Shown here in pieces: positions 5,986-46,297 of a DNA stretch of 63,866 nucleotides; within the stretch, counting starts at the first letter, position 1; every line of letters begins with the position of its first letter. The position numbers were made by a program, and so were the translations under genes. The DNA comes from Macrostomum lignano (lineage: Eukaryota). The DNA is taken from the NCBI GenBank assembly GCA_002269645.1, contig NIVC01003236.1, positions 1 to 63,866 of the forward strand, written 5' to 3'. The notes below the pieces were generated by a model. The model searched no databases. It was not told the DNA's origin and saw nothing but the letters and a program-made list of their open reading frames with translations.

Positions 5986-8900
5986 ATTTAGCTCTGATTT
6001 GTGTGTGTGTTTATTTAGCTGTGATTTGGTGTGTTTATTTAGCTGTGATTTGCGTGTGTTTATTCACCTGTCATGTGTGTTTATTTAGCTGTGATGTGTG
6101 TTTATTTAGCTGTGATGTGTGTGTGTGTTTATTTAGCTTTGATTTGCGTGTGTTTATTTAGCTCTGATTTGTGTGTGTGTGTTTATTTAGCTGTAATTTG
6201 GTGTGTTTATTTAGCTGTGATTTGCGTGTGTTTATTCAGCAGTGATGTGTGTTTATTTAGCTGTGATGTGTGTGTTTATTTTGCTGTGATGTGTGTGTTT
6301 ATTTAGCTGTGATGTGTGTGTGTGTGTGTTTATTTAGCTGTGATGTGTGTTTTTATTTAGCTGTGATGTGTGTGTTTATTTAGCTGTAATGTGTGTGTGT
6401 TTATTTTGCTGTGATGTGTGTGTTTATTTTGCTGTGATGTGTGTGTGTTTATTTAGCTGTGATGTGTGTTTTTATTTAGCTGTGATGTGTGTTTATTTAG
6501 CTGTAATGTGTGTGTGTTTATTTTGCTGTGATGTGTGTGTTTATTTTGCTGTGATGTGTGTTTTTATTTAGCTGTGATGTGTGTTTATTTAGCTGTGATG
6601 TGTGTTTATTTAGCTGTGATGTGTGTGTTTATTTTGCTGTGATGTGTGTGTTTATTTTGCTGTGATGTGTGTGTTTATTTTGCTGTGATGTGTGTGTTTA
6701 TTTTGATGTGATGTGTGTGTGTGTTTATTTAGCTGTGATGTGTGTGTTTATTTTGCTGTGATGTGTGTGTTTATTTTGCTGTGATGTGTGTGTTTATTTA
6801 GCTGTGATGTGTGTGTGTGTGTTTTTAGCTGTGATGTGTGTGTGTGTTTATTTAGCTGTGATGTGTGTGTGTGTTTATTTAGCTGTGATGTGTGTTTATT
6901 TAGCTGTGATGTGTGTGTTTATTTAGCTGTGATGTGTGTGTTTATTTAGCTGTGATGTGTGTTTATTTAGCTTTGATGTGTGTGTTTATTTAGCTGTGAT
7001 GTGTGTTTATTTAGCTTTGATGTGTGTGTTTATTTAGCTGTGATGTGTGTGTGTGTTTATTTAGCTGTGATGTGTGTTTATTTAGCTGTGATGTGTGTGT
7101 TTATTTAGCTGTGATGTGTGTGTTTATTTAGCTGTGATGTGTGTGTTTATTTAGCTTTGATGTGTGTGTTTATTTAGCTGTGATGTGTGTGTGTGTGTGT
7201 GTGTGTGTTTTCGACATCAGCCAGCTGACATCGGGCACCCGCACCCGACCGCAGGTACAAGCGCCTGGTATTCAAGAACGGCGAGTGCAACATCTCCCAC
7301 TACAACATCAAGAAACGAAAGCGGAGATTCCTAGCAGACATTTTCACCACTCTGGTGGATATTAAATGGCGGTACGCGCTTCTGTTGTTCACAGTGGGGT
7401 TCATAGCCAGCTGGTTGTTTTTCTCCCTATTCTGGTTGCTCATCTGCTTCTCGCACGGCGATTTGGACGAAAAAAAGCCGAAGAATTTTGTACCGTGCGT
7501 TGAAAATGTGAATGGATTCACCGATGCCCTGCTGTTCTCTATTGAGACTCAGCACACGATTGGCTACGGGTTTCGGTATCCGTCAGACAGGTGCCCGGAG
7601 GCTGTGCTCATGGTGATGGTGCAGAGCTGCTTTGGAGTCATCATCCAGGTGAGACTTTTGTGAGATTAAGGATCTAAAAATTAATGTTTTAATTTAAAAA
7701 AAATTCGAAAAAAATTCTTTAAAGTGCTATTTTGAATTTTAGGAGTCGACGGAGTAAGGCTTAGTACTCATTTTGAACTTCAGGAATGCAGAAATAGGAA
7801 AGTAACATGTGGAACTTTCAGAATCTGGCAAAGTTCATGTGGAACTTTCAGAATCTAGCAAAGTATACGTGGAACTTTCAGAATCTAGCAAAGTACATGT
7901 GGAACTTAAATAATCTAGCAAAAACATGTTAAACTTTAGGAATCTAGCCAAGTACTTGTGGAACTTTCAGAATCTAGCAAAGTACATGTGGAACTTTAGG
8001 AATCTAGCAAAAACATGTTAAACTTTAGGAATCTAGCCAAGTACATGTGGAACTTTCAGAATCTAGCAAAGTACATGTGGAACTTTAGGAATCTAGCAAA
8101 AACATGTTAAACTTTAGGAATCTAGCCAAGTACATGTGGAACTTTCAGAATCTAGCAAAGTACATGTGGAACTTTAGGAATCTAGCAAAAACATGTTAAA
8201 CTTTAGGAATCTAGCCAAGTACATGTGGAACTTTCAGAATCTAGCAAAGTACATGTGGAACTTTAGGAATCTAGCAAAGCACATGTGTAACTTTAGGAAT
8301 CTAATAAAGTACATGTCGAACTTATGAATCTATAAAATACATATGAAACTTAATATTTATCAACGTACATTGCAAACTTTAATAAGCATTGCATCGCCGT
8401 ACCCACCTACCCTTTAGGCCCTGATGACTGGATTAGTATTCGCCAAGCTGTCGCGCCCCAAGAAGCGCGCCGAGACGCTGATGTTCAGCAAGAACGCGGT
8501 GATCTGCAAGCGGGACGGTCAGATGGTGCTGCTGTTTCGCGTAGGCGACATGCGCAAGTCTCAACTGCTAGAGGCTCACGTTCGTGGAATATTAATTAAA
8601 AAACGAATCACAAGGGAGGGCGAAGTGCTGCCTTTGGAGCAGTTCGACATTGACTTAGGCTACGGCGAGGGCTACGATCGACTGTTCCTAGTCTGGCCAA
8701 TTATTGTCGAGCATAAAATCACGAAGGATTCGCCATTCTGGGAGATTTCTAGCGGCGATTTGTTGTGCGAACAATTCGAGCTAATTGTCATACTGGAGGG
8801 CATTATTGAGTCCACTGGGATGACTACTCAGGTACGGCTGTGGTTTTGGTGTTTATAGTTTTCTAGGGTGAGATTTTGGAGTATCTATAGACTTCTGGGT

Positions 8901-12499: not shown

Positions 12500-13174
12500 A
12501 TGCCCGCCAACAGTCGCCCTGAGATCAGCGTTCGTTTCAACGAGCCGCCGCAGTCGTCAACTCAGAATTCAAATCATTCGCCAACTGCAGCCGATGCAAA
12601 ACCGCCGCCGCCTGCTGCAGTGCGTCGGGTTCGACCGCACACAGCCGCCGCTGCCGCTGGGCCGTCGTGTGGAGCGCCGTTCCTGGATGCCCAGGGCAAC
12701 CGTACCCAGCCCAGCAGAGACCCGCAGCATCCTTCATCTGCTGCAGGCCCTGCCAACACAACCATGACCGGCCTGAGACGGAAGAAACGAAAGAAGAGAC
12801 GACCGAAGACCGCCCTGGGGATCGAGCAGCAGCAGCAGCAGACTACTTCGTCATCGGCGGCGGCCGGAGCCAACGGCGCGGCAGGCGGCAGCGAGCCGAA
12901 CTTTCCAACTTTGAATCCGCGCGTTTTTCACGCGTTGCGCGGATTTTTAACCACGGAAAGTTTGAAGAAGACGAAATTCTATTCGGATAGAGAGGAGAGA
13001 ATGTCCAGCAGGAGGCTGCAGCTGGACGAGCAGAGTGAGCGGCTGAAGCAGCGAATTGGTGGCTTCTACCAGAAGCTGGACAGCTTCATCGCCGAGACCA
13101 ACAAGGCTGCTCAGTGGGAGCCGGAAGACCGGCGGAAGCAGAAAAGTTTTCTAGACGATTTGGACAATCTGTGA
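12500..13174 (+). CDS. Intronless hypothetical protein, 224 aa, with a disordered N-terminus, basic NLS-like patch and C-terminal coiled coil
   Basis: GC-rich non-repetitive ORF with an in-frame stop upstream (12437), a TATA box upstream and AATAAA near 13729. Contains RRKKRKKRRPK and a helical C-terminus (EERMSSRRLQLDEQSERLKQRI). No family recognised. Confidence 0.6.
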   Translation: MPANSRPEISVRFNEPPQSSTQNSNHSPTAADAKPPPPAAVRRVRPHTAAAAAGPSCGAPFLDAQGNRTQPSRDPQHPSSAAGPANTTMTGLRRKKRKKRRPKTALGIEQQQQQTTSSSAAAGANGAAGGSEPNFPTLNPRVFHALRGFLTTESLKKTKFYSDREERMSSRRLQLDEQSERLKQRIGGFYQKLDSFIAETNKAAQWEPEDRRKQKSFLDDLDNL

Positions 13175-14209: not shown

Positions 14210-15220
14210 GGTGGTGCTCAGAATGAGAGATCTGAGATACTCAGTGCTCAGAATGAGGATCTGAGAGATACTCAGTGCTCAGAATGAGGATCTGAGAGAT
14301 ACTCAGTGCTCAGAATGAGGATCTGAGAGATACTCTGTGCTCAGAATGAGGATCTGAGAGATACTCAGTGCTCAGAATGAGGATCTGAGAGATACTCAGT
14401 GCTCAGAATGAGGATCTGAGAGATACTCTGTGCTCAGAATGAGGATCTGAGAGATACTCAGTGCTCAGAATAAGATATCTGAGAGATACTCAGTGCTCAG
14501 AATAAGATATCTGAGAGATACTCAGTGCTCAGAATGAGGATCTGAGAGATACTCAGTGCTCAGAATGAGGATCTGAGAGATACTCAGTGCTCAGAATGAG
14601 GATCTGAGAGATACTCTGTGCTCAGAATGAGGATCTGAGAGATACTCAGTGCTCAGAATGAGGATCTGAGAGATACTCTGTGCTCAGAATGAGGATCTGA
14701 GAGATACTCAGTGCTCAGAATGAGGATCTGAGAGATACTCAGTGCTCAGAATGAGGATCTGAGAGATACTCAGTGCTCAGAATGAGGATCTGAGAGATAC
14801 TCAGTGCTCAGAATGAGGATCTGAGAGATACTCAGTGCTCAGAATGAGGATCTGAGAGATACTCAGTGCTCAGAATGAGGATCTGAGAGATACTCAGTGC
14901 TCAGAATGAGGATCTGAGAGATACTCAGTGCTCAGAATGAGGATCTGAGAGATACTCAGTGCTCAGAATGAGGATCTGAGAGATACTCAGTGCTCAGAAT
15001 GAGGATCTGAGAGATACTCAGTGCTCAGAATGAGGATCTGAGAGATACTCAGTGCTCAGAATGAGGATCTGAGAGATACTCAGTGCTCAGAATGAGGATC
15101 TGAGAGATACTCAGTGCTCAGAATGAGGATCTGAGAGATACTCAGTGCTCAGAATGAGGATCTGAGAAATACTCTGCGCTCAGAATGAGGATCTCAGAAA
15201 TACTCTGCGCTCAGAATGAG
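14210..15220. repeat. 31-bp minisatellite (TCAGTGCTCAGAATGAGGATCTGAGAGATAC), about 32 near-identical copies
   Basis: Direct reading. It starts about 120 bp 3' of the DNMT3 stop codon. Confidence 0.97.
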
Positions 15221-15336
15221 GATCAGGGACATGGAAAACCAGATTATTAGGGACATAAAGGGATTGCCAATGTCAGTCAGAGTATCAGGTAATTCCCAAT
15301 GCTCAGCAGGCCTCATCAACAAGCTCAGAGCAGTGC

Positions 15337-16446
15337 TCACTCGCCGTCGCCGGCATCAGGCCCCGGCAGCACAGCAAAGAAGTGGCGCAGCGGGCGCAGC
15401 AGGTGGGCAACCAGAGGCAGACACCAGCTGCGGCCAATCAGCTTGCGCCTGGCCAGGTCGGTCAGTCCGCAGTCCGTGTAGTGTGCCGGGAAACCGAACA
15501 GCCGCTCGAGCTCCGTCACCCACAGGGCGTCCGGGAGGCCGTCAGCGTCGGCCACCGGCAGGGAGCCGTCAGGGCCGCGGCCGCTGCAGCGCTTCGTGGT
15601 GACGCAGCCGACGGTGGCGTGACGGGCGGCGCGGCCGCTGCGAGGGTCGATGCAGCTGGCCAGATGGCGCTGGCGCCTTCGGGATGGGAGTGACGCTTTC
15701 TGTTCAGGGAGTGACTGGTTCAGGGAGTGACTGGTTCAGGGAGTGACTGGTTCAGGGAGTGACTGGTTCAGGGAGTGACTGGTTCAGGGAGTGACTGGTT
15801 CAGGGAGTGACTGGTTCAGGGAGTGACTGGTTCAGGGAGTGACTGGTTCAGGGAGTGACTGGTTCAGGGAGTGACTGGTTCAGGGAGTGACTGGTTCAGG
15901 GAGTGACTGGTTCAGGGAGTGACTGGTTCAGGGAGTGACTGGTTCAGGGAGTGACTGGTTCAGGGAGTGACTGGTTCAGGGAGTGACTGGTTCAGGGAGT
16001 GACTGGTTCAGGGAGTGACTGGTTCAGGGAGTGACTGGTTCAGGGAGTGACTGGTTCAGGGAGTGACTGGTTCAGGGAGTGACTGGTTCAGGGAGTGACT
16101 GGTTCAGGGAGTGACTGGTTCAGGGAGTGACTGGGAGGGTGTGGCTTTGGGAGAACCAACCAGACCCAGTTGCCGGAACTAACTCACTCAGTTTCACGGG
16201 GCTCAGGCCCAGCAGCGGCAGCCGGCCTGGCGCAGTGCACAACATCGGCAGCCAGCGTGGAGGCGACGCCAGAGGAGCGCAGCATGCCGGGAAGGTTGCC
16301 CCAGAACAGGCGGGCTCGGCGCTGAGCTGAGAAAATGACGGCGTCCAGGCGGATCGGCTCGCGGCCTAGGAACCTGTGGGGTGGGGTAGAGTAATGGACT
16401 GACGGAGGACAGACAGACAGAGAGACAGACAGACAGAAAGACAGGG

Positions 16447-16519
<73 letters not shown>

Positions 16520-16522
16520 TTA

Positions 16523-16569
<47 letters not shown>

Positions 16570-19500
16570 AAGACAGACAGACAGACAGACAGAGAGACAG
16601 ACAGACGGACAGACAGACAGAGAGACAGACAGACAGACAGACAGACAGGGAGACAGACAGACAGAGAGACAGAGAGACAGACAGACAGACAGACAGAGAG
16701 ACAGGCAGACAGACAGACCTGGAAATGCGAGTCTTATCCTCCTGCCGCATGCTGGCCACATTCTCGAACAGCCAGAACAGGGGGCGCCGTTGGCGCTCGT
16801 CGGCGCTCGGGCTGCCAATCCGACGGAGCAGTTCGAGAATTCGGTGAAACTCGAAAAAAAGCAGTCCGGATTCTGAGGCCAGGCCTTGCCTGACGGAGAT
16901 GGGATATTAGAAAATTGAAATTTTCATAGGATTCTCGATACAGGAGGCTGGCCAAGAAAACGACACCTGGGAGGCGGGCAGCCCAGCAACTGAGGATCTG
17001 GGAGGCTGGCCCAGCAACTGAGGATCTGACAGGGCTGGCCCAGCAACTGAGGATCTGGGAGGCTGGCCCAGCAACTGAGGATCTAACAGGGCTGGCCCAG
17101 CAACTGAGGATCTGGGAGGCTGGCCCAGCAACTGAGGATCTGGGAGGCTGGCCCAGCAACTGACACTCTGGGAGGCTGGCCCAGCAACTGGGGATCTGGG
17201 AGGCTGGCCCAGCAACTGAGGATCTGGGAGGCTGGCCCAGCAACTGAGGATCTGGGAGGCTGGCCCAGCAACTGAGGATCTGGGAGGCTGGCCCAGCAAC
17301 TGAGGATCCGGAAGGCTGGCCCAGCAACTGAGGATCTGGGAGGCTGGCCCAGCAACTGAGGATCCGGGAGGCTCGCCCAGCAACTGAGGATCTGGGAGGC
17401 AGAACACGTGCACCAGTGGAGCAAGCAGTCACCTATTGGGATTGGCAGCGGACAGCTGACTGCAAGGCGAGCCCCCAATCAGCAGATCGATGGGCAGCAG
17501 AGAGCGCAGCCGGTCCTCAGTCAGCTCGGTGACGCTGCCCAGCTGCCGCACCCGGTTGCCATGGTTACAAGCGGCCACACGGATTGCGTCCGGGTCGATC
17601 TCGGAGGCGAAGCAGATTTCTACGGACAGGCCGGCGGACTGCAGGCACAGCAAGGCGGAGGCCACGCCATCGAATAGCGACAGAACTCGGAGCGGCTGGG
17701 AGCAGCCCGCGCTGCGCTGAAGCTCCGGCGGCGGCGGCGGGTGCAGAGAATGGGGCTCCGTTTGGCTGCAATAAATAAAAGCGATGCTTTTGGGGTAATT
17801 AACCTCATTTTGACATATTTTCTCCTCCATTCTCATCCCTGCTCTTCCCCTCCATTCTCACCCCTGCTCTTCCCCTCTATTCTCGTCCCTGCTCTTCCCC
17901 TCCATTCTCATGCCTGCTGTTCCCCTCCATTCTCATGCCTGCTGTTCCCCTCCATTCTCATCCCTGCTCTTCCCCTCCATTCTCACCCCTGCTCTTCCCC
18001 TCTATTCTCACCCCTGCTCTTCCCCTCCATTCTCATCCCTGCTCTTCCCCTCCATTCTCATGCCTGCTCTTCCCCTCCATTCTCATCCCTGCTCTTCCCC
18101 TCCATTCTCATCCCTGCTCTTCCCCTCCATTCTCATGCCTGCTGTTCCCCTCCATTCTCACCCCTGCTATTCCCCTCCTTCTCATTTCCTTCCATTTTCA
18201 TGCCTTAACGCCATCATGCTCCCCTCCCCTCTATTCTCATCAATCAGCAGCAGAAACCTACTAATACAGTCGCTGCCGCCAGTCGCTCCTGGGCTGAATG
18301 AGACGCTCAGACAGCAGCTGGCACAGGTGGCACAGCCACCCATTGTCGCTGATAATTCTTTGCCAAGCATCTTGGCCAATCAGCAAGGTGAGGCAGCCTT
18401 GACAGAAGCATCTGCCGCATTCAGCTGAACCGCACATGGCCTGAAAATTCAATTATTTATCGAATAAATTGAAGCTTCCAGCATGAGAAGCTTTAAGAAT
18501 GAGAAGCTTGGGAAGCTTTGAGCAAGAGAAGCTTTGAGCAAGAGAAGCTTTGAGCTTGAGAGGCCTTGAGCATGAGAGTTTGAGAGGCTTTGAGCATGAG
18601 AAGCTTTGAGCATGAGAAGCTTTGAGCAAGAGAAGCTTTGAGCTTGAGAAGCTTTGAGCTTGAGAGGCTTTGAGCATGAGAAGCTTTGAGCATGAGAAGC
18701 TTCGAGCATGAGAAGCTTTGAGCTTGGGAGGCTTTGAGTATGAAAAGCTTTGAGCATGAGAAGCTTTGAGCATGAAAAGCTTCGAGCATGAGAAGCTTTG
18801 AGCTTGAGAAGCTTTGAGCATGAGAAGCTTTGAGCTTGAGAGGCTTTGAGCATGAGAAGCTTTGAGCATGAGAAGCTTCGAGCATGAGAAGCTTTGAGCT
18901 TGGGAGGCTTTGAGTATGAAAAGCTTTGAGCATGAGAAGCTTTGAGCATGAGAAGCTTTGAGCATGAGAAGCTTCGAGCATGAGAAGCTTTGAGCTTGGG
19001 AGGCTTTGAGCATGAAAAGCTTTGAGCATGAGAAGCTTTGAGCATGAAAAGCTTCGAGCATGAGAAGCTTTGAGCTTGAGAGGCTTTGAGCATGAGAAGC
19101 TTTGAGCATGAGAAGCTTTGAGCATGAGAAGCTTTGAGCTTGAGAAGCTTTGAGCATGAGAAGCTTTGAGCTTGAGAGGCTTTGAGCTTGAGAGGCTTTG
19201 AGCATGAGAAGCTTTGAGCTTGAGAGGCTTTGAGCATGAGAAGCTTTGAGCATGGGAGGCTTTGAGCATGAAAAGCTTTGAGCATGAGAAGCTTTGAGCA
19301 TGAAAAGCTTTGAGCATGAGAAGCTTTGAGCTTGAGAAGCTTTGAACATGAGAAGCTTCGAGCATGAGAAGCTTTGAGCAAGAGAAGCTTTAAGCTTGAG
19401 AGGCTTTGAGCATGAAAAGCTTCGAGTATGAGAAGCTTTGAGCAAGAGAAGCTTTGAGCTTGAGAAGCTTTGAACATGAGAAGCTTTAGGCATGAGAAGC

Positions 19501-22500
19501 TTCGAGCATGAGAAGCTGAAAGGTCTCAATAAATTACGATCTTACAGAAAGCAGACGCTAACAGAAAGCAAGCCAGAAGCGCACCTGATTCCCGGGCCTG
19601 CCGCACACAGAGCAGTACATGAACCAGCCGTCATCGCCAACGGAGAAGCACACAGTCAAATAGTTTTCCAAGCAGTCGACGCACAGCGACCCGCGCAGCA
19701 CCGGGTGCTCCATCAACAGCGGCAGCTGCTGTTCAACCCGCACAGTGCCGCAGGCGAGGCAGACGTTCTCTAACGCGATCGATCCGTCCAAGACTTTCTC
19801 ATAGATGGCGGTCACATCTGGCGAAACCAATCGAGGCCGCGAGCTCAGGCCAGACAGTGAGTTTCGATTCGAACCCGATGAGTAGGTTGACGATGATGGA
19901 GAGAACGAGTGAGGCTGAGCCATCCCAGCAGCCTCATCATCATCGGAGTCTGCGAGAATTCGAGAGAAGTGGACCGAGTATGGGGATCTGGAAACTTAAG
20001 AATTTCACATCTAGAAATCTAGAGGATTTAGGGAAGATTTAGGGATCTGGGAATCTCGACGATTTGAGAAAATTTGGGGATCTGGGAATCTCGAGGATTT
20101 GAGAAAATTTAGGGATCTGGGAATCTCGACGATTTGAGAAAATTTGGGGATCTGGGAATCTCGAGGATTTGAGAAAATTTAGGGATCTGGGAATTTCGAG
20201 GATTTGAGAAAATTTAGGGATCTGGGAATCTCGACGATTTGAGAAAAATTTGGGGATCTGGGAATCTCGAGGATTTGAGAAAATTTGGGGATCTGGGAAT
20301 TTCGAGGATTTGAGAAAATTTAGGGATCTGGGAATCTCGACGATTTGAGAAAAATTTGGGGATCTGGGAATCTCGAGGATTTGAGAAAATTTGGGGATCT
20401 GGGAATTTCGAGGATTTGAGAAAATTTAGGGATCTGGGAATCTCGACGATTTGAGAAAAATTTGGGGATCTGGGAATCTCGAGGATTTGAGAAAATTTGG
20501 GGATCTGGGAATTTCGAGGATTTGAGAAAATTTAGGGATCTGGGAATCTCGACGATTTGAGAAAATTTGGGGATCTGGGAATCTCGAGGATTTGAGAAAA
20601 TTTAGGGATCTGGGAATCTCGACGATTTGAGAAAATTTGGGGATCTGGGAATCTCGAGGATTTGAGAAAATTTAGGGATCTGGGAATTTCGAGGATTTGA
20701 GAAAATTTAGGGATCTGGGAATCTCGACGATTTGAGAAAAATTTGGGGATCTGGGAATCTCGAGGATTTGAGAAAATTTGGGGATCTGGGAATTTCGAGG
20801 ATTTGAGAAAATTTAGGGATCTGGGAATCTCGACGATTTGAGAAAAATTTGGGGATCTGGGAATCTCGAGGATTTGAGAAAATTTGGGGATCTGGGAATT
20901 TCGAGGATTTGAGAAAATTTAGGGATCTGGGAATCTCGACGATTTGAGAAAAATTTGGGGATCTGGGAATCTCGAGGATTTGAGAAAATTTGGGGATCTG
21001 GGAATTTCGAGGATTTGAGAAAATTTAGGGATCTGGGAATCTCGACGATTTGAGAAAATTTGGGGATCTGGGAATTTCGAGGATTTGAGAAAATTTAGGG
21101 ATCTGGGAATCTCGACGATTTGAGAAAAATTTGGGGATCTGGGAATCTCGAGAATTTGAGAAAATTTGGGGATCTGGGAATTTCGAGGATTTGAGAAAAT
21201 TTAGGGATCTGGGAATCTCGACGATTTGAGAAAAATTTGGGGATCTGGGAATCTCGAGGATTTGAGAAAATTTGGGGATCTGGGAATTTCGAGGATTTGA
21301 GAAAATTTAGGGATCTGGGAATCTCGAGGATTTAGAGAAGATTTGAGGATCTGGGAATCTCGAAGATTTGGGGAATATTTGGGGATCTGGGAATCTCGAG
21401 GATTTAGAGAAGATTTGAGGATCTGGGAATCTCGAAGATTTGGGGAATATTTGGGGATCTGGGAATCTCGAGGATTTAGAGAAGATTTGAGGATCTGGGA
21501 ATCTCGAAGATTTGGGGAATATTTGGGGATCTGGGAATCTCGAGGATTTAGAGAAGATTTGAGGATCTGGGAATCTCGAAGATTTGGGGAATATTTGGGG
21601 ATCTGGGAATCTCGAGGATTTAGAGAAGATTTAGGGATCTGGGAATCTCGACGATTTGAGAAAAATTTGGGGATCTGGGAATCTCGAGGATTTGAGAAAA
21701 TTTGGGGATCTGGGAATTTCGAGGATTTGAGAAAATTTAGGGATCTGGGAATCTCGAGGATTTAGAGAAGATTTGAGGATCTGGGAATCTCGAAGATTTG
21801 GGGAATATTTGGGGATCTGGGAATCTCGAGGATTTAGAGAAGATTTGAGGATCTGGGAATCTCGAAGATTTGGGGAATATTTGGGGATCTGGGAATCTCG
21901 AGGATTTAGAGAAGATTTGAGGATCTGGGAATCTCGAAGATTTGGGGAATATTTGGGGATCTGGGAATCTCGAGGATTTAGAGAAGATTTGAGGATCTGG
22001 GAATCTCGAAGATTTGGGGAATATTTGGGGATCTGGGAATCTCGAGGATTTAGAGAAGATTTGAGGATCTGGGAATCTCGAAGATTTGGGGAATATTTGG
22101 GGATCTGGGAATCTCGAGGATTTAGAGAAGATTTGAGGATCTGGGAATCTCGAAGATTTGGGGAATATTTGGGGATCTGGGAATCTCGAGGATTTAGAGA
22201 AGATTTGAGGATCTGGGAATCTCGAAGATTTGGGGAATATTTGGGGATCTGGGAATCTCGAGGATTTAGAGAAGATTTAGGGATCTGGGAATCTCGACGA
22301 TTTGAGAAAAATTTGGGGATCTGGGAATCTCGAGGATTTGAGAAAATTTGGGGATCTGGGAATTTCGAGGATTTGAGAAAATTTAGGGATCTGGGAATCT
22401 CGAGGATTTAGAGAAGATTTGAGGATCTGGGAATCTCGAAGATTTGGGGAATATTTGGGGATCTGGGAATCTCGAGGATTTAGAGAAGATTTGAGGATCT

Positions 22501-23367
22501 GGGAATCTCGAAGATTTGGGGAATATTTGGGGATCTGGGAATCTCGAGGATTTAGAGAAGATTTGAGGATCTGGGAATCTCGAAGATTTGGGGAATATTT
22601 GGGGATCTGGGAATCTCGAGGATTTAGAGAAGATTTGAGGATCTGGGAATCTCAAAGATTTGGGGAACATTCGGGAATGTGGGAATCGCGGGGATTTGGG
22701 GAACATTTTGTACGTGGATTCTCGGGGATTTAAGAATCTGGGAATCGTGGGATTTGGGGAACATTTGGAGATCTGGGAATCTCGAGGATTTAGGGATGAT
22801 TTGGGGATCTGGGAATCTCGGGATTTGGGAGATTTGGGTTCTGGTAATACCAGTATGAGGATTTGGCAAGTCAAGCCTGAGGATCGCGGAAACCCTAGTC
22901 CCCACCTGACGTTTTCGGCACTGAGAAACTGAAGATGTGGGAATAGTAGCATCTAGACGAAAAAACAACTCGATCGCATCGAAATGAAAGCCACAACATA
23001 CATGCGCAACCTTGGGAATCACCCGGCCGTTTCTATTGGCAACACACACATGTAAGTCGCTATTGGCTGAGAGCAGTCACGTGACTACTATTCTGTCCAA
23101 TAGCGACATACGTGTGTGTTGCCAATAGAAACGGCCGGGTGAATCCAAAGGTTGCGCCCAAGCATGAGCCACAACAGCAATACAAAACTCACCGCTGACA
23201 GCGAGATGCAATCCCTCACTTTCGGCCACGGCACCGAGCGATTTACGGTGCTGCCTGCGGATGGGTGAGTCAGAATCAGGCTGCTGGTAAGGCTGTTGGA
23301 ATTTTATCATAGTGAATTGGCGATGGATTCCATCCATCCATCCATCCATCCATCCAACCATCTATCC

Positions 23368-23466
<99 letters not shown>

Positions 23467-23485
23467 ATCTATCTATCTATCTATC

Positions 23486-23535
<50 letters not shown>

Positions 23536-23580
23536 ATGTGTATCTATCTATATGTGTATCTATCTACCTATCTATCTATC

Positions 23581-23618
<38 letters not shown>

Positions 23619-23716
23619 ATGTGTATCTATCTATCTATCTATCTACCTATCTATCTATCATCTATCTATCTATATCTATCTATCTATCTATCTCTGTCTA
23701 TCTATCTGTCTATCTG

Positions 23717-23763
<47 letters not shown>

Positions 23764-23882
23764 CTGTCTATCTATCTATCTATCTATCTATCTGTCTGTC
23801 TATCTATCTATCTATCTATCTATCTATGATAGATCTATCATCTATCTATCTATCTATCTCTGTCTATCTATCTGTCTATCTG

Positions 23883-23914
<32 letters not shown>

Positions 23915-23971
23915 CCTATCTATCTATCATCTATCTATCTATCTATCTCTGTCTATCTATCTGTCTATCTG

Positions 23972-24014
<43 letters not shown>

Positions 24015-24153
24015 CTGTCTATCTATCTATCTATCTATCTATCTGTCTGTCTATCTATCTATCTATCTATCTATCTATGATAGATCTATCATCTATCTAT
24101 CTATCTATCTCTGTCTATCTATCTGTCTATCTGTCTATCTATCTATCTATCTA

Positions 24154-24236
<83 letters not shown>

Positions 24237-25661
24237 CTGTCTATCTATCTATCTATCTATCTATCTGTCTGTCTATCTATCTATCTATCTATCTGTCTGT
24301 CTATCTATCTATCTATCTATCTGTCTGTCTATCTATCTATCTACCATCTAATCAGGCTTACTTATAAATGTCAACCAGACAGTCGGTGGCCCAGTCAGAC
24401 AGAAGAGGCTGACGCCTCTTCCTCGCCGCCTCGTCCTCAGCAGCCAGTTGCGCCAAATCCTGACCGATTGCGCTGCCGCCACTACTGCCGGTAGCACCAT
24501 CAGACTTTTGAAAACTCTCGTCTCGACGTTCGATTAATTCTAGGCGAAGTCGGCGAACACCTCGAACTAGCAGGGAGTTTTTCTGCGCCGATGACGTCAT
24601 AGCGGCTGCCAGGGACTGCGGATTGTCTATGGACTGGAGACCCGAAACGGGTAGCTCGGACACTTTGCCCTCAGCCAGCCACAGGAGCCAGCGCATCCCG
24701 GGGCGGGCCGGGCGAAGGTGGCAGCGGCGGCCGGAGACCACCAGAGCTGGGTAGGACTGCGGGTTTGATGTGGGATCTGAGTCTCTGCTGATGGGATCTG
24801 AGTCTCTGCTGATGGGATCTGAGTCTCTGCTGATGGGATCAGAATCTCTATTGATGGGATCAGAGTCTCTATTGATGGGATCTGAGTCTCTACTGATGGG
24901 ATCTGAATCTCTGCTGATGGGATCAGAGTCTCTACTGATGGGATCTGAGTCTCTGCTGATGGGATCAGAATCTCTATTGATGGGATCAGAGTCTCTATTG
25001 ATAGGATCAGAGTCTCTAGTGATGGGATCTGAATCTCTGCTGATGGGATCTGAATCTCTATTGATGAATAGAGATTCTGATTATTATTTATAATTATTAT
25101 TTAGAATCCAGACATTCATGCGGCCCAAAGATATAGCCAACAAAGTCTCACCTGTCTCTGCCAACGCGCCCACACCAGCCTGCCAATATCTTCATTTTCG
25201 CAATCATCTTTGCCATCAGCATTTGGATCATCATTCACAGATTGGCTAGTTGTCTTGCCAGCTGGGAGCAGAATGCTGCAGTCAGGTCTCAGCTCAGCTA
25301 GCCTATCGGCAGCAGATTTTGAGCTGGTGGCAGCAGCTGACTGCTTCACAGATTTGGAAATGTCAGTCAGTACCACACGTAGCTGGGGCAGTGTTGTCAA
25401 GTTTTCACTGCTAGCATTAGCAAGACCTGGCTTGGCTTGACCTGCAACATCACTGTCCACATCAGTTATATCAGTAGTAGACTTGTTTGCTGACTGTTGA
25501 CGCTTTCTAAGCTGAGGTCCAAAGTGGCCACACCTTTTGGGATATTTTCTTTTATTGGATCTAGAAGAACCAGCTGCCTTTGACTTTGGCACTGACAATG
25601 CTGGCTTTGAATTTATAGACACCCTGCGTTTTTGTAGCTTTACACTGTCATAGAGGGACAT
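15337..25661 (-). CDS. DNMT3: DNA (cytosine-5)-methyltransferase 3-like protein (PWWP-ADD-MTase), 9 coding exons, about 846 aa
   Basis: Exons in transcript order: 25661-25152, 24756-24362, 23254-23193, 19949-19585, 18440-18262, 17765-17433, 16889-16719, 16373-16188, 15676-15337. All junctions are GT-AG, phases are consistent and the total is 2541 nt with no internal stop. PWWP: [18 protein letters not shown]...[13 protein letters not shown]: [49 protein letters not shown]. MTase: motif [68 protein letters not shown]. The small exon 3 is the least certain. Confidence 0.93.
15702..16132. repeat. Perfect 16-bp minisatellite (TTCAGGGAGTGACTGG), about 27 copies, filling the last DNMT3 intron
   Basis: Direct reading, with no variant units seen. 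Confidence 0.97.
16405..16718. repeat. (GACA)n microsatellite in a DNMT3 intron
   Basis: Direct reading. It abuts the splice donor at 16718. Confidence 0.95.
16975..17400. repeat. 28-bp minisatellite (CAGCAACTGAGGATCTGGGAGGCTGGCC) in a DNMT3 intron
   Basis: Direct reading. It is the reverse complement of the array at 40470-41040. Confidence 0.95.
17820..18200. repeat. 25-bp pyrimidine-rich minisatellite (TCCCCTCCATTCTCATCCCTGCTCT)
   Basis: Direct reading, in a DNMT3 intron. Confidence 0.9.
18475..19515. repeat. 16-bp minisatellite (AGCTTTGAGCATGAGA) between the two ADD exons
   Basis: Direct reading. It is the source of the 290-358 aa [12 protein letters not shown] pseudo-ORFs. Confidence 0.95.
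20040..22830. repeat. 35-36 bp satellite array (GGGATCTGGGAATCTCGAGGATTTGAGAAAATTT) with a 72-bp dimer sub-array
   Basis: About 2.8 kb of tandem sequence in a DNMT3 intron. The [24 protein letters not shown] ORFs are the 72-bp dimer read in frame. Confidence 0.97.
23004..23157. other. Long imperfect inverted repeat (arms of about 60 bp, central palindrome AGTCACGTGACT)
   Basis: The left arm 23004-23066 is about 90% identical to the reverse complement of 23097-23157. Confidence 0.85.
23330..24345. repeat. (TATC)n/(GATA)n microsatellite, about 1 kb
   Basis: Direct reading. It generates the SIYL ORFs. Confidence 0.97.
24770..25070. repeat. 21-bp minisatellite (GGGATCTGAGTCTCTGCTGAT) in the intron that splits the PWWP domain
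   Basis: Direct reading. It generates the MGSESLL ORF. Confidence 0.95.
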
Positions 25662-38928: not shown

Positions 38929-41900
38929 ATGGTTTTAGAGAACGTGAACATTCTTGGACTGGTATCCGTGCTGCTGTTCTATCTGCTCATTCTAGCTGTG
39001 GGCATCTGGGCTGGACGAAGGAGCAAGAACCGCGGCGACAGCGAAGAGGTCATGGTGGCTGACAGGAGCATCGGGCTGACCGTGGGAATCTTCACGATGA
39101 CTGGTGAGTCACAGATCTACGAGGGGCGTCCGGAAAGTAGTGTTACTATTACTCGGTGTGGACGTATGGAAAGTTGCACTTGCATGAGTTTGGTGTCATT
39201 TGAAAGCGGCAAGTCTCTTCTTTAAAATGACACCAATTGCAAGAGATTTGAATATGTGCTTCAAGAGATTTGGACCAAGGGGCTTTAGCACTAAGGGGCT
39301 TTAGCACCAAGGGGCGCCAGCACCAAGGGGCTTTAGCACCAAGGGGCGCCAGCACCAAGGGGCGCCAGCACCAAGGGGCGCCTGCACCAAGGGGCGCCAG
39401 CACCAAGGGGCGCCAGCACCAAGGGGCTTTAGCACTAAGGGGCTTTAGCACCAAGGGGCGCCAGCACCAAGGGGCGCCAGCACCAAGGGGCGCCAGCACC
39501 AAGGGGCGCCAGCACCAAGGGGCGCCAGCACCAAGGGGCGCCAGCACCAAGGGGCGCCAGCACCAAGGGGCGCCAGCACCAAGGGGCGCCAGCACCAAGG
39601 GGCGCCAGCACCAAGGGGCGCCAGCACCAAGGGGCGCCAGCACCAAGGGGCGCCAGCACCAAGGGGCGCCAGCACCAAGGGGCTTTAGCACCAAGGGGCT
39701 TTAGCACCAAGGGGCTTTAGCACCAAGGGGCGCCAGCACCAAGGGGCGCCAGCACCAAGGGGCGCCTGCACCAAGGGGCGCCAGCACCAAGGGGCGCCTG
39801 CACCAAGGGGCGCCAGCACCAAGGGGCGCCAGCACCAAGGGGCGCCAGCACCAAGGGGCGCCAGCACCAAGGGGCGCCAGCACCAAGGGGCGCCAGCACC
39901 AAGGGGCGCCAGCACCAAGGGGCGCCAGCACCAAAGGGCGCCAGCACCAAGGGGCGCCAGCACCAAGGGGCGCCAGCACCAAGGGGCGCCAGCACCAAGG
40001 GGCGCCAGCATCAAGGGGCGCCAGCACCAAGGGGCGCCAGCACCAAGGGGCGCCAGCATCAAGGGGCGCCAGCACCAAGGGGCGCCAGCACCAAGGGGCG
40101 CCAGCATCAAGGGGCGCCAGCACCAAGGGGCTTTAGCACCAAGGGGCGCCAGCACAATTTCCTGTAAAAGTAGCTAGTAGTCCATGCATATAAATAAGTC
40201 ACTGATAATGACAATTGCTCCACAACTTTCCCATTCCAACACGCACAGCCACCTGGGTTGGCGGAGGCTACATCAACGGCACGGCAGAGACGGTGTTTAA
40301 CCCGGCCATCGGGCTGGTTGGTGCTCAGGCTCCGTTTGGCTACGCTTTCAGCCTGGTCTTCGGTTTGTAACAATTCTTGTAGATTTTGTGCGCACTATTT
40401 GCACCAAGTGCATAATTTATAAATTAATTAGAGTAAATAATAAGTATATAACGCGCTTCTTTTAACTGAGTTGCTGGGCCAGCCTCCCAGATCCTCAGTT
40501 GCTGGGCCAGCCTCCCAGATCCTCAGTTGCTGGGCTAGCCCTGTCAGATCCTCAGTTGCTGGGCCAGTCTCCCAGATCCTCAGTTGCTGGGCCAGCCTCC
40601 CAGATCCTCAGTTGCTGGGCCAGCCTCCCAGATCCTCAGTTGCTGGTTGCTGGGCCAGCCTCCCAGATCCTCAGTTGCTGGGCCAGCCTAGCAGATCCTC
40701 AGTTGCTGGGCCAGCCTCCCAGATCTTCAGTTGCTGGGCCAGCCTAGCAGATCCTCAGTTGCTGGGCCAGCCTCCCAGATCCTCAGTTGCTGGGCCAGCC
40801 TCCCAGATCCTCAGTTGCTGGGCTAGCCCTGTCAGATCCTCAGTTGCTGGGCCAGCCTCCCAGATCCTCAGTTGCTGGGCCAGCCTCCCAGATCCTCAGT
40901 TGCTGGGCCAGCCTCCCAGATCCTCATTTGCTGGGCCAGCCTAGCAGATCCTCAGTTGCTGGGCCAGCCTCCCAGATCTTCAGTTGCTGGGCCAGCCTAG
41001 CAGATCCTCAGTTGCTGGGCCAGCTTCCCAGATCCTCAGCTTAATAATATCAGCCACAATCGCTCTCACACCTAGGCGGGCTGTTCTTCGCGAACCAGAT
41101 GCGCACTAGGGGCTACGTGACCATGCTGGACCCGTTCCAGTACAAGTACGGCGAGAGAATGTGCGGCCTGCTGTTTGTGCCGGCTCTGCTTGGCGAAGTT
41201 TTCTGGTCGGCAGCGATTCTGTCCGCACTGGGTGAGCCTCATTAATAGCGAGAGGTGCAAGGTGTATCTACCTACCTAAATGAGCATTGAGTTGTCAGGG
41301 CAGCCTACTATGTGAATTTTCAAAGGACACGAATGCCGGATAGAGAGGCTTCGCGGGCCGTCTGAGGCCCTTGTTTACATTCGAACTAGGCAAAAAATCA
41401 TGTGGCGACGCGAACGCTTCCAGAGTCGAAGTAAAACTTAGGCATCTCAATGAAGTGTCAATTAAATTTACATCTGACACTCCAGATTGCGGGTTTTATG
41501 CTTGATTCAGATGCAACTTTAACCGTAACAGGAGATTAAAATTCGTTTCTGAATTTATTCAACACGCAGGCGCCACACTCAAAGTGATACTAAACATGGA
41601 CAACACTCACGCTGTGATTGTGTCAGCCTGCATCGCACTCGGCTACACTCTGTTTGGAGGTCTCTACTCGGTGGCTTACACAGACGTTGTGCAGCTGTTC
41701 TGCATATTTATTGGACTGGTAAATGATTGCTTCGGCGTCTGCTTGACGTTTTACCTAAAGGTGTCACCTGGATGTGTCTCCAAGTGTGCCTGCAAGTGTG
41801 ATTGCCTAAAGTGCGTCCTGCGCGTGATACATGATGTTTAACAGTTTAACCTTCACTGGGCAGCCTAGTGCAGAGCCTTCGATAACATCTTCCAGTGAAT

Positions 41901-44559
41901 CCTGCTCATTCAGCTAACTCTTGAGAAAATTTACAAGTGAGCCAGTGTCGTACACAGACACGCACGCATACACACGCTCACACAGGGTGTACAACGGGCC
42001 CTAATTGATTTTCTAATCGTCAGGCATGTACACTCTCTGTCAGTGATGGGCACCGCTAAATTTATTTTTAGCGCCGCTAATTAGCGCTGTCGCTAACTGA
42101 TAGAAGAAAAAAGTTGGCGATCGCTAATTAGCGGGCGCCATTTCTACTTTGAGTTTTGCGCAATTAGCGCCGCTAATTTTGGAATGCGCTAATTAATAAA
42201 TACATTTAATATAAACTGCCGTTTCACACGTACTTATGCGCTATTGCACATTTTTAACTCACACTTTTTAAATGAATAAGCTATATAATAATGCTATTGC
42301 TAATAATTTGTTTTTATTATCAATCCTAATAAAAAATCCTCAAGCCGCTGAACTGTCAGAGCAACAGTTATTAGAAAGAGTTCCTAAACTACAATGCTGT
42401 TTGCCTTGAAAAACGTCAAGGGCCCTTGCTACCGGGGCCATGGTCTTATACTCAAGAAGGAAGGCCTGTCGCTTCGCATCATCGCTTAGAATATCAACTG
42501 AGTTGAACGTTGAATTCTTTGATTAAATTAAATTAATCAACAACTTTTTGCTAACGAATTAAAGGTAGTAAGAAAACTTTTGAAAGTCAATGATGAAAAC
42601 AAGATAAATTGTTGATAACGAAAGCAAAAAAAAGATATTCAAATTTCGTTTCGCATTTCTAAGAAAATTAGAAACATTTTAGAGATTTAGTATAGGTGGA
42701 TTTACGTAATATTTAACTTATTACTCAAATATGGTCTCATTTTAAGTATTAAACAGTCATTAACCGTCTAGTTTTATAGCAAAAAAATGAATTTAGCGCA
42801 ATTAGCGATTTTCAGAAAATAATAGCGGCGCTTTGATAGCGCGCGCTAATTTGAATTTCAATTTAGTGGAATTAGCGGCGCTTTAGCGGAATTCAAATTT
42901 AGCGGCGCTAGTGCCTATCACTGCTCTCTGTGCCTTGTGGGTTGGCCCTCATGGTTGCGAATCACAGGACAACCCCCCAGAAATATTTTCTGGCACAAGC
43001 AAGACCCAAATGAATGTTGCCGCACACGGAATAAAACCAGGGGTACTAGTCAGATGCTTAAATTGAATAGAATGATACATTGAAAGCTTGCTGATTGAGA
43101 GCCAACCTATTCACACTTTATCCTCATCAGTGGCTCTCTATTCCGTTCGCCATGATGAACCCGCTGGTGCAGCCCATCGCAACCACAGCGCTCACTCGGG
43201 TTGTGAACGGCACCGAACAGACCGGCTGGCTGGGCACCGTGGCACCTCAGGATGCCGCTTACTACGCCGATAATTTTTTGATGCTCACCTTTGGCGGCAT
43301 ACCCTGGCAGGTGTATTTTCAACGCGTTCTGTCGGCCAAGACGGCTCGAAATGCTCAGTTATTGTCGTACATTGCCGCCTTTGGCTGCTTGGTGATGGCT
43401 CTGCCATCCGTTCTAATTGGAGCTGTGGCAGCTTCAACAGGTAAGAGAGCTGACCCTGATGCAACGTCTTTTGACGCAGTCATACGCACAGGCACACACT
43501 CATACAGGAGTGTACAGCGGCCCTAACTTTATTTATCTTCGTAAATTGCACTAGCAGACCCGAGCCGAGATTCCAATTTAGTCCGAAATTAACGTGACTG
43601 CACTTGGAATCAAGCCTGGGCCTCTGGCACATGGAGCACCGCACCAGACCACTAGGATACGTCCCCCCAACAAATGCCCCTATTCCATCTTACAAACTGG
43701 TAACATGCGCATGGTACTGTTCATGTGGTATCATTAGCCTTGTCCAACACATTCCCCTGCCCCACTGCCAGACTGGGAGAGCACAGCCTACTTCAACCTG
43801 ACCCAGTCGACGCCATTTAGCAAAGACGACATGAAGCTGATTCTGCCGCTAGTCCTGCAGTACCTCTGCCCGCCGGCCGTCGCTTTTGTCGGCTTGGGCG
43901 TCGTCTCCGCCGCCGTGATGTCCTCAGCGGACAGCTCGATCCTCTCTGCCGCTTCCATGTTCGCTCGCAATGTGATGAAGCCGATTTTTTGGCAGACGGC
44001 AACTGACCGCCACGTCATCTGGTCGATGCGGGCAGCCATTGTAGTTGTTGGCATCATTGCTTGCATCTTAGCCATCCAGATCTCGACAATCTACGGCTTG
44101 TGGTTCCTCTGCTCGGATCTTGTCTATGTAGTCCTGTTCCCGCAGCTGATCTCTGTTATCTACCTAGACTGGTCCAACACGTACGGCAGTTTGGCCGGTT
44201 ACGTCACCGGGATGTTTCTGAGAATATCGGCCGGCGAGGCGCTGATTTTCCTGCCCGCTCTGTTCCACTATCCCGGCTTTGTTGACGGCAGCGAATTTTA
44301 TCAACGATTTCCCGTTAAAACATTCAGCATGCTGGCTTCGTTGGCTTCGTCCGCTCTAGTGAGCTACATGACTCACCGAATTTTCACTGAAGGAAAGCTG
44401 CCACCTGCTTGGGATGTTTTTCAATGCGTTGTCCCGAAGGAGATTCGAAGTGTCACCATCGCTGCTGCTGCTGAAGATGATGATGGATTGATGCTGCCAC
44501 CAATGGTTCAGTCGAAGCCAGAGGCCAACGAGCCTGAGTTGCGATCTGATATTGATTAA
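38929..44559 (+). CDS. SLC5A7: High-affinity choline transporter (SLC5A7/CHT1), 6 exons, about 563 aa
   Basis: Exons 38929-39103, 40249-40362, 41076-41231, 41570-41718, 43131-43440 and 43772-44559, with consistent phases. Motifs: [118 protein letters not shown]. Confidence 0.97.
39275..40155. repeat. 16-bp GC-rich minisatellite (GCACCAAGGGGCGCCA)
   Basis: About 55 tandem copies in SLC5A7 intron 1. Confidence 0.97.
40470..41040. repeat. 28-bp minisatellite (TTGCTGGGCCAGCCTCCCAGATCCTCAG) in SLC5A7 intron 2
   Basis: Same family as the array at 16975-17400. Confidence 0.95.
42041..42923. mobile_element. Non-autonomous hAT-like element (MITE), 883 bp, in SLC5A7 intron 4
   Basis: TIRs CAGTGATGGGCAC / GTGCCTATCACTG (12/13). 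Perfect 8-bp TSD CTCTCTGT at 42033-42040 and 42924-42931. Subterminal TTAGCG(C/G)CGCTAA palindromes at both ends. Confidence 0.92.

Positions 44560-45512: not shown

Positions 45513-46297
<785 letters not shown>

What the first reader, a model, noticed from the sequence alone, without database searches (positions are those of the whole stretch)
15337..25661. Complete PWWP-ADD-MTase DNMT3 hidden across nine satellite-separated exons
The ORF track shows only fragments, but the splice phases give one uninterrupted frame of about 846 aa with the catalytic PC, ENV and RxR motifs intact. Planarians and schistosomes are known to retain only DNMT2, so a three-domain DNMT3 in a probable flatworm matters for the history of methylation loss. 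I recall DNMT3 homologues being reported for Macrostomum, so presence alone may not be new. About 75% of the locus is intron, mostly tandem repeat.
Basis: partly seen in the sequence, partly recalled or inferred. Interest (0 to 1): 0.7.

Follow-up and report, generated by a model that had tools for sequence, protein, structure and literature searches.

The report
Known Macrostomum lignano DNMT3 gene
The region holds an intact nine-exon DNMT3 (de novo DNA methyltransferase) gene of the flatworm Macrostomum lignano, but the gene is already annotated in public databases and its presence in this species is already in the literature, so the finding is correct but not new.

Summary
On the minus strand of 15337-25661, nine exons joined by eight GT..AG introns give one open frame of 846 aa.

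- **Domains:** a divergent PWWP barrel, a complete ADD zinc-finger domain (all 12 cysteines present) and a C5-methyltransferase domain with motifs I, IV (PC), VI (ENV), VIII (RxR), IX and X intact.
- **Closest matches:** the best solved-structure match is human DNMT3A (E 4e-98). The best database hits outside the species are all animal DNMT3s (37-43% identity).
- **Locus structure:** introns make up 75.4% of the locus and 86% of intron bases are tandem repeats. Each intron carries its own array.

The organism is Macrostomum lignano. The protein is 99% identical to NCBI BOX15_Mlig034009g1 (846 aa). Splicing that public locus at my nine mapped exons reproduces the deposited protein exactly. UniProt already names the M. 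lignano entries DNA (cytosine-5-)-methyltransferase. Three papers state that M. lignano keeps DNMT1 and DNMT3 and has low 5mC, all citing Wasik 2015.

Verdict: real, correctly read, already known. Two minor points may be undescribed. The PWWP motif is degenerate (SYPA instead of SWWP, no Pfam hit). The intron arrays differ up to 13-fold in copy number between two 99%-identical gene copies.

The parts
25152..25661 (-). Exon 1 (510 nt, aa 1-170). Holds the ATG at 25661, a disordered basic/Ser-rich N-terminus, and the first strands of the PWWP barrel ([12 protein letters not shown]). Donor is CAG|GTGAGA.
   Evidence: Maps to L001 10001-10510 at 98.8% identity. pLDDT is below 50 for aa 1-155.
24362..24756 (-). 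Exon 2 (395 nt). Holds the rest of the PWWP domain, starting with SYPA (in place of SWWP), and the helical bundle.
   Evidence: DNMT3B PWWP chains 1khc, 3flg and 5ciu match aa ~150-211 at E 2.6e-7 to 3e-6. Strands at 162-212 have pLDDT 87-92.
23193..23254 (-). Exon 3 (62 nt), a linker micro-exon ([20 protein letters not shown]).
   Evidence: 100% identical in L001. Present in P0001.
19585..19949 (-). Exon 4 (365 nt). Holds the acidic/Ser-rich linker, the ADD GATA-like zinc finger and the start of the PHD finger.
   Evidence: Pfam PF17980 ADD_DNMT3 at 3e-8, aa 371-425. Invariant cysteines C386, C389, C412, C415, C435, C438.
18262..18440 (-). Exon 5 (179 nt). Holds the ADD PHD finger. An alternative donor at 18268 would remove 2 aa (YY).
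   Evidence: Pfam PF21255 at 9e-10, aa 435-484. Cysteines C447, C452, C457, C460, C481, C484 are invariant. Donor comparison.
17433..17765 (-). Exon 6 (333 nt). Holds MTase motif I ([12 protein letters not shown] binding) and motif IV (GGSPC, catalytic Cys605).
   Evidence: Pfam PF00145 at 2e-18, aa 528-667. Alignment to DNMT3A. Invariant columns.
16719..16889 (-). Exon 7 (171 nt). Holds MTase motif VI (FWLFENV, E657).
16188..16373 (-). Exon 8 (186 nt). Holds motif VIII ([16 protein letters not shown]691/R693) and a lineage-specific insertion of about 22 aa before the TRD (aa ~705-734).
   Evidence: The insertion is predicted disordered, pLDDT below 50. It is present in all four deposited M. 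lignano models.
15337..15676 (-). Exon 9 (340 nt including the stop TGA at 15337-15339). Holds the TRD loop, motif IX ([13 protein letters not shown]) and motif X ([11 protein letters not shown]).
24771..25066 (.). Intron 1 tandem array: 21-mer, 14 copies.
   Evidence: The same family is in L001 intron 1 at 41 copies.
23329..24343 (.). Intron 2 array: (ATCT)n, about 250 copies, with a (TCCA)n head.
   Evidence: L001 has 97 copies.
20009..22838 (.). Intron 3 array: 36-mer, 80 copies (2.8 kb).
   Evidence: L001 has only 6 copies.
18471..19517 (.). Intron 4 array: 16-mer, 66 copies.
   Evidence: L001 has 151 copies.
17820..18185 (.). Intron 5 array: 25-mer, 14.7 copies.
   Evidence: L001 has 18.8 copies.
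16981..17400 (.). Intron 6 array: 28-mer, 14.9 copies. The same consensus, inverted, forms the array at window 40469-41039.
   Evidence: L001 has 11.9 copies.
16408..16718 (.). Intron 7 array: (GACA/GTCT)n. The donor GTCTGT is itself the first repeat units.
   Evidence: In L001 the whole intron is only 105 bp.
15702..16134 (.). Intron 8 array: 16-mer, 27 perfect copies.
   Evidence: L001 has about 107 copies.

Best explanation
This is a copy (an allele, or a recent duplicate) of the Macrostomum lignano orthologue of animal DNMT3, the de novo DNA cytosine-5 methyltransferase.

Shown here:
- an intact nine-exon gene encoding 846 aa;
- a disordered N-terminus, a divergent PWWP barrel, a full ADD domain and a complete C5-MTase domain;
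- purifying selection between the two copies compared.

Inferred from the family (human DNMT3A/3B biochemistry and structures):
- The enzyme binds S-adenosyl-methionine through motif I.
- It flips the target cytosine, attacks C6 with Cys605 (motif IV) and protonates N3 with Glu657 (motif VI). Arg691/Arg693 (motif VIII) position the base, and the methyl group is transferred to C5, chiefly at CpG.
- The ADD domain probably reads unmethylated H3K4 and relieves autoinhibition.
- The PWWP domain may tether the enzyme to H3K36-methylated chromatin, but its degenerate motif makes this step the least certain.

The introns are little more than splice signals plus one private tandem array each. The array lengths drift rapidly between copies.
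For: - **Gene model:** nine exons, eight GT..AG introns, no internal stop.
- **Pfam:** DNA_methylase 2e-18, ADD_DNMT3 3e-8, DNMT3_ADD_GATA1-like 9e-10.
- **Solved structures by sequence:** DNMT3A 3.8e-98, DNMT3B 4.6e-93, DNMT3C 5.6e-64, against plant DRM2 about 1e-10 and HaeIII 1e-5.
- **Database hits:** the best 120 of 1232 hits are all DNMT3-type proteins carrying ADD domains, at 37-43% identity.
- **Conserved residues:** the 12 ADD cysteines and the motif residues are invariant across 10 and 34 sequences.
- **Predicted structure:** the AF2 MTase domain matches DNMT3B/3A crystal structures at TM 0.89-0.90, rmsd about 3.4 A. ADD plus MTase matches 4u7t at TM 0.78. Three-domain DNMT3A2/3B3 chains are the top hits.
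- **Rough tree:** a neighbour-joining tree places the protein among protostome DNMT3s.
- **Identity of the gene:** 99% identical to BOX15_Mlig034009g1. Splicing L001 at the mapped exons gives P0001 exactly, and the splice sites are conserved. Neighbouring genes are syntenic: a 224-aa ORF and an IRK channel.
- **Selection:** pN/pS is 0.25 between the copies.
- **Literature:** M. lignano retains DNMT1 and DNMT3 and has low 5mC.
Against: - No transcript data could be examined here, so the junctions rest on sequence logic and on the public annotation. That annotation is described as transcriptome-based.
- The PWWP is not detected by Pfam. It has lost one Trp of the WWP motif and changed the other to Tyr, both nearly invariant in the 34 homologues.
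- The TRD region carries an insertion of about 22 aa and a Cys where the other sequences have a nearly invariant Asn (position 764).
- No tree with DNMT1 or DNMT2 outgroups was built.
- Enzymatic activity was not tested.
- CpG o/e of the CDS is 0.87 and about 1.0 in neighbouring ORFs, so the locus shows no clear footprint of germline methylation.
Confidence: 0.95

Rival explanations
1. The gene is a decaying or non-catalytic DNMT3 relative (a pseudogene, or a DNMT3L-like regulator) rather than an active enzyme.
For: The PWWP motif is degenerate and Pfam gives no PWWP hit. There is an insertion and an Asn-to-Cys change in the TRD region. Methylation in the species is reported to be low. CpG o/e is near 1.
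Against: The frame is open across nine exons in two independent copies. All catalytic motifs that DNMT3L lacks are present: the PC cysteine, ENV and RxR. pN/pS is 0.25. The MTase domain is confidently predicted and superposes on active DNMT3A/B.
Confidence: 0.04
2. The window is not a separate gene copy. It is the same locus as BOX15_Mlig034009g1 seen as the other haplotype or in another assembly or strain, and the intron length differences are partly assembly artefacts (collapsed or expanded arrays).
For: Exon identity is 98-100% and the flanking genes are the same. The published assembly is described as highly redundant, with 180 Mb in blocks of at least 95% identity. Tandem arrays are hard to assemble.
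Against: There are ten amino-acid and 15 synonymous differences. Intron 1 of L001 holds a 23-mer array and a TTAGGG run that are absent here, so the sequences differ genuinely. UniProt holds at least three distinct M. lignano DNMT3 models. This rival concerns copy status only and is compatible with the main explanation.
Confidence: 0.4

Closest known systems
BOX15_Mlig034009g1 (Macrostomum lignano, assembly GCA_002269645.1, contig NIVC01000305.1). UniProt entries A0A1I8IPI0, A0A1I8FN39 and A0A1I8IKC4 are named 'DNA (cytosine-5-)-methyltransferase'.
   Same: Same length (846 aa), 99% identity, the same nine exons and the same splice sites. Each intron holds the same repeat family, and the neighbouring genes are the same.
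   Different: There are 10 amino-acid and 15 synonymous differences. Intron lengths differ up to about 12-fold (intron 1: 395 vs 4570 bp; intron 3: 3243 vs 446 bp) through array copy number and one extra array.
Vertebrate DNMT3A/DNMT3B (for example PDB 4u7t, 6pa7, 5yx2, 6u8p)
   Same: PWWP-ADD-MTase order, all ADD zinc ligands, motifs I, IV, VI, VIII, IX and X, and the MTase fold at TM about 0.9.
   Different: - Only about 36-40% identity.
- The PWWP motif is SYPA instead of SWWP, and FGD is replaced by LAE.
- There is an insertion of about 22 aa after motif VIII.
- The position of DNMT3A R882 holds Asp, by my reading of the alignment.
- The long N-terminus is unrelated.
Protostome DNMT3s (molluscs Patella and Haliotis, nemerteans Lineus and Tubulanus, hymenopterans, ticks, Trichinella)
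   Same: They group with the M. lignano protein in a neighbour-joining tree and share the domain order. Identity is 37-43% over ADD plus MTase.
   Different: Those proteins keep a Pfam-detectable PWWP (PF00855) with WWP. The M. lignano protein has the longest terminal branch.

Membership tests
DNMT3 (animal de novo DNA cytosine-5 methyltransferase) | C-terminal C5-MTase domain with motifs I (FxGxG), IV (PC), VI (ENV), VIII (RxR), IX and X in order. | tested here: met
   PF00145 at 2e-18. The alignment to DNMT3A shows each motif. Positions: FDG 535, PC 604-605, ENV 657, RRAR 690, GFP 795, GRSW 815. These columns are invariant in 34 homologues.
DNMT3 (animal de novo DNA cytosine-5 methyltransferase) | ADD (ATRX-DNMT3-DNMT3L) domain, a GATA-like plus PHD zinc finger, directly upstream of the MTase. 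| tested here: met
   PF17980 at 3e-8 and PF21255 at 9e-10. All 12 zinc-ligand cysteines are invariant. Solved ADD chains match at E 1e-16 to 1e-20.
DNMT3 (animal de novo DNA cytosine-5 methyltransferase) | PWWP domain N-terminal to the ADD. | tested here: inconclusive
   Pfam PWWP is not hit, even at E up to 10. However, DNMT3B PWWP-only chains match aa ~150-211 at E 2.6e-7 to 3e-6. AF2 predicts a five-strand barrel plus helices at pLDDT 87-92. Three-domain chains are the top Foldseek hits. The motif is SYPA, with one Trp lost and one changed to Tyr. Homology is supported; function is uncertain.
DNMT3 (animal de novo DNA cytosine-5 methyltransferase) | Phylogenetic placement inside the DNMT3 clade, apart from DNMT1, DNMT2 and plant DRM. 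| tested here: inconclusive
   All of the best 120 hits are DNMT3. PDB scores are DNMT3A 1e-98, against DRM2 1e-10 to 1e-14 and bacterial enzymes 1e-5. The neighbour-joining tree places it among protostome DNMT3s. No tree with outgroups could be built with the sequences available.
DNMT3 (animal de novo DNA cytosine-5 methyltransferase) | SAM-dependent de novo methylation of unmethylated CpG DNA. | not testable with these tools
   Needs an enzyme assay or RNAi followed by methylome analysis.
DNMT3L (catalytically dead regulator) | Loss of the catalytic motifs (no PC cysteine, degenerate motifs IX and X) and no PWWP. | tested here: not met
   All catalytic motifs are present. DNMT3L chains score only 1e-30 and cover only part of the protein.

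The most novel reading that the evidence does not exclude
The M. lignano DNMT3 may have a functionally altered chromatin reader. Its PWWP has lost the canonical WWP motif (SYPA, with FGD changed to LAE), so the enzyme may no longer be recruited by H3K36 methylation. That could underlie the unusually low methylation reported for this flatworm, as an intermediate step on the way to the complete loss seen in planarians and parasitic flatworms. Separately, the pattern of one private, fast-evolving tandem array per intron may reflect a genome-wide mode of intron expansion in this species that has not been described as such. Several of the arrays share a GGATCTGRG core.
Probability: 0.15. Interest if true: 0.4.

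Novelty: already known. Interest (0 to 1): 0.13.

Why it matters
DNMT3 in a free-living flatworm marks the point in platyhelminth evolution before DNMT1 and DNMT3 were lost in planarians and parasitic flatworms. Published reviews already make this point for Macrostomum lignano. What remains open is functional. [quoted passage not shown] No functional study of this gene turned up in the searches I made. The gene model confirmed here could serve as a template for RNAi or for cloning, but it adds nothing that the public annotation does not already give.

Tried and rejected
- **Alternative E5 donor (CT|GTATTA at 18268, giving 844 aa):** rejected in favour of TA|GTAGGT. The latter is closer to the donor consensus and reproduces the deposited 846-aa protein.
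- **Alternative E8/E9 junctions that would remove the 22-aa insertion (weak donor GTGCAC, acceptor CAG|CGC):** rejected. All four deposited M. lignano models contain the insertion, and the chosen donor is a perfect GTGAGT.
- **Pfam search for PWWP on the isolated N-terminal region at E up to 10:** no hit.
- **Wasik et al. 2015 (PMC4603488):** not held, so the primary statement on 5mC and DNMTs is cited through three later papers.
- **Rfam scan of the whole window:** no RNA family reached its gathering score.
- **Searches for the gene identifier and for functional studies:** nothing specific found.
- **Plus-strand ORFs inside the locus (for example 21773-22411 and 23312-24367):** these are translations of tandem repeats, not genes.
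Full report
**Observation.** The ORF list for 14-27 kb shows only fragments, several of which resemble DNMT3 on the minus strand. Six-frame segments and boundary inspection allowed a model of nine exons (+ coordinates):

| Exon | Coordinates |
|---|---|
| E1 | 25152-25661 |
| E2 | 24362-24756 |
| E3 | 23193-23254 |
| E4 | 19585-19949 |
| E5 | 18262-18440 |
| E6 | 17433-17765 |
| E7 | 16719-16889 |
| E8 | 16188-16373 |
| E9 | 15337-15676 |

All eight introns are GT..AG, the phases agree, and the 2541-nt CDS has no internal stop, giving 846 aa. Introns make up 75.4% of the locus. TRF marks 6718 of the 7784 intron bases (86%) as tandem repeat and marks no exon base.

**What the protein is.**
- Pfam finds the C5 DNA methylase domain (2e-18) and both halves of the DNMT3 ADD domain (3e-8, 9e-10).
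- Against solved structures, the best sequence matches are human DNMT3A (3.8e-98 over aa 380-834), DNMT3B and DNMT3C. Plant DRM2 (about 1e-10 to 1e-14) and bacterial HaeIII (1e-5) are far behind.
- A search of 5.8 billion proteins with the ADD-MTase part returned 1232 hits at E <= 1e-20. The best 120 are all DNMT3-type proteins from cnidarians, nemerteans, molluscs, arthropods, Trichinella, echinoderms, amphioxus and vertebrates, at 37-43% identity.
- In alignments of 10 and 34 sequences, the twelve ADD cysteines and the catalytic residues are invariant: FDG 535-537, PC 604-605, ENV 657-659, R691/R693, GFP and HYTD of motif IX, and GRSW of motif X.
- AlphaFold2 with that alignment gives confident ADD and MTase domains. 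Foldseek places the MTase on DNMT3A/3B crystal structures at TM 0.89-0.90 (rmsd about 3.4 A) and ADD plus MTase on 4u7t at TM 0.78. Three-domain DNMT3A2/3B3 chains are the top hits.
- A rough neighbour-joining tree puts the protein among protostome DNMT3s on a long branch.

**The PWWP domain.** This is the one weak point of the three-domain description. Pfam does not detect a PWWP, even at E up to 10 on the isolated region. The precomputed Pfam list for the public protein also lacks PF00855, while most homologues have it. The region is nevertheless homologous:
- PWWP-only chains of DNMT3B (1khc, 3flg, 5ciu) match aa ~150-211 at E 2.6e-7 to 3e-6.
- Invariant columns G160, L162, P173, W193, W196, K201 and S203 line up.
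- The model predicts a five-strand barrel followed by helices at pLDDT 87-92.

The signature motif is SYPA instead of SWWP, with one Trp deleted and the other changed to Tyr; both are at least 90% conserved in the 34 sequences. FGD is replaced by LAE. Whether the domain still reads H3K36 methylation cannot be judged here.

**Other departures from the family.**
- An insertion of about 22 aa after motif VIII (aa ~705-734), predicted disordered.
- A Cys where the others have a nearly invariant Asn in the TRD loop (position 764).
- A disordered 155-aa N-terminus.

**Organism and prior knowledge.** The full-length query hit BOX15_Mlig034009g1 of Macrostomum lignano (846 aa, 99% identity, 100% coverage). 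It also hit UniProt entries for the same species already named DNA (cytosine-5-)-methyltransferase.

The public locus (NIVC01000305.1, assembly GCA_002269645.1; L001) carries all nine exons end to end at 98-100% identity. It has the same splice-site hexamers apart from one base in the intron 7 acceptor. Splicing it at the mapped coordinates reproduces the deposited protein exactly. The neighbouring genes agree as well: a 224-aa ORF and an inward-rectifier K+ channel. The assembly paper describes its annotation as transcriptome-based and reports heavy redundancy, with 180 Mb in blocks of at least 95% identity, and 15% simple and tandem repeats.

Three papers cover the presence of the gene, all citing Wasik et al. 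2015:
[quoted passage not shown] - A 2023 review says the same.

I could not read the 2015 paper itself.

**State of the gene.** Between the window copy and the public copy there are 15 synonymous and 11 non-synonymous nucleotide differences (10 amino-acid changes), giving pN/pS of 0.25. Both copies are therefore under purifying selection, and none of the changes touches a catalytic or zinc-binding residue. A pseudogene or a DNMT3L-like dead regulator is very unlikely. CpG o/e is 0.87 in the CDS and about 1.0 in neighbouring ORFs. That fits weak or absent germline methylation of these genes but proves nothing from one locus.

**Mechanism (inferred from the family).** SAM binds at motif I. The target cytosine is flipped out. 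Cys605 attacks C6, Glu657 protonates N3, and Arg691/Arg693 hold the base while the methyl group is transferred to C5. The ADD domain probably senses unmethylated H3K4 and releases autoinhibition; the acidic GDDG loop is kept. PWWP-dependent targeting is the uncertain step.

**The introns.** Each intron consists of short unique splice-proximal sequence plus one array of its own. A 31-mer array also lies just past the stop codon.

| Intron | Repeat unit | Copies in window | Copies in L001 |
|---|---|---|---|
| 1 | 21-mer | 14 | 41 |
| 2 | ATCT | 252 | 97 |
| 3 | 36-mer | 80 | 6 |
| 4 | 16-mer | 66 | 151 |
| 5 | 25-mer | 14.7 | 18.8 |
| 6 | 28-mer | 14.9 | 11.9 |
| 7 | GACA/GTCT | 38.9 (period 8) | 17.8 (period 4) |
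| 8 | 16-mer | 27 | about 107 |

The public copy has the same family in the same intron, but with very different copy numbers. Its intron 1 also carries an extra 23-mer array and a short TTAGGG run. Intron lengths therefore differ up to about 12-fold between copies whose exons are 99% identical. Part of this could be assembly error in long arrays.

The intron 6 unit is identical in consensus to an inverted array at 40469-41039. Several units share a GGATCTG(A/G)G core. In intron 7 the donor GTCTGT is itself part of the microsatellite. I found no paper describing this intron pattern specifically, but I did not test it genome-wide.

**Verdict.** It is, however, a rediscovery of an annotated gene whose evolutionary significance has been published. 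Interest is low. The degenerate PWWP and the per-intron arrays are the only aspects that might repay further work.

Noticed in passing
window 15677-25151 (introns), 14214-15224, 40469-41039; L001 10511-23398: Every DNMT3 intron carries its own tandem array. The 99%-identical public copy has the same family in each intron, but copy numbers differ up to 13-fold (for example the 36-mer: 80 vs 6 copies). Several units share a GGATCTG(A/G)G core, and the intron 6 28-mer recurs inverted at 40469-41039.
   Followed up: partly
window 16713-16725 (minus strand): The intron 7 donor GTCTGT is the first units of the (GTCT)n microsatellite that fills the intron. In the public copy the whole intron is only 105 bp.
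   Followed up: partly
L001 13882-13949 and 11176-13012: Intron 1 of the public copy holds a telomere-like (TTAGGG) run of about 12 units and an 80-copy 23-mer array. Both are absent from the window's intron 1.
   Followed up: no
window 50538-51866 and 53522-54820 (+): Two tandem, apparently intronless ORFs (442 and 432 aa) encode Cys-loop ligand-gated ion channels. Both have the Neur_chan_LBD and Neur_chan_memb domains.
   Followed up: partly
window 8424-8858 (+), 12500-13174 (+), 43831-44559 (+), 56746-57597 (-): Other content of the window:
- An exon of an inward-rectifier K+ channel (IRK_C, 1.5e-45).
- A 224-aa ORF that is an annotated gene in the public locus but has no Pfam hit reaching its gathering threshold.
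- A sodium:solute symporter exon.
- A reverse-transcriptase fragment.
   Followed up: partly
window 45514-46297: A perfect (AGT)n microsatellite of 261 units (100% matches). It creates an artificial 306-aa ORF at 45467-46387.
   Followed up: no
window 1-63866: 30% of the window is tandem repeat, compared with the 15% simple and tandem repeats published for the genome. GC content swings between 0.26 and 0.65 per kb, with GC-rich exons (0.58-0.72) set in a lower-GC background.
   Followed up: partly
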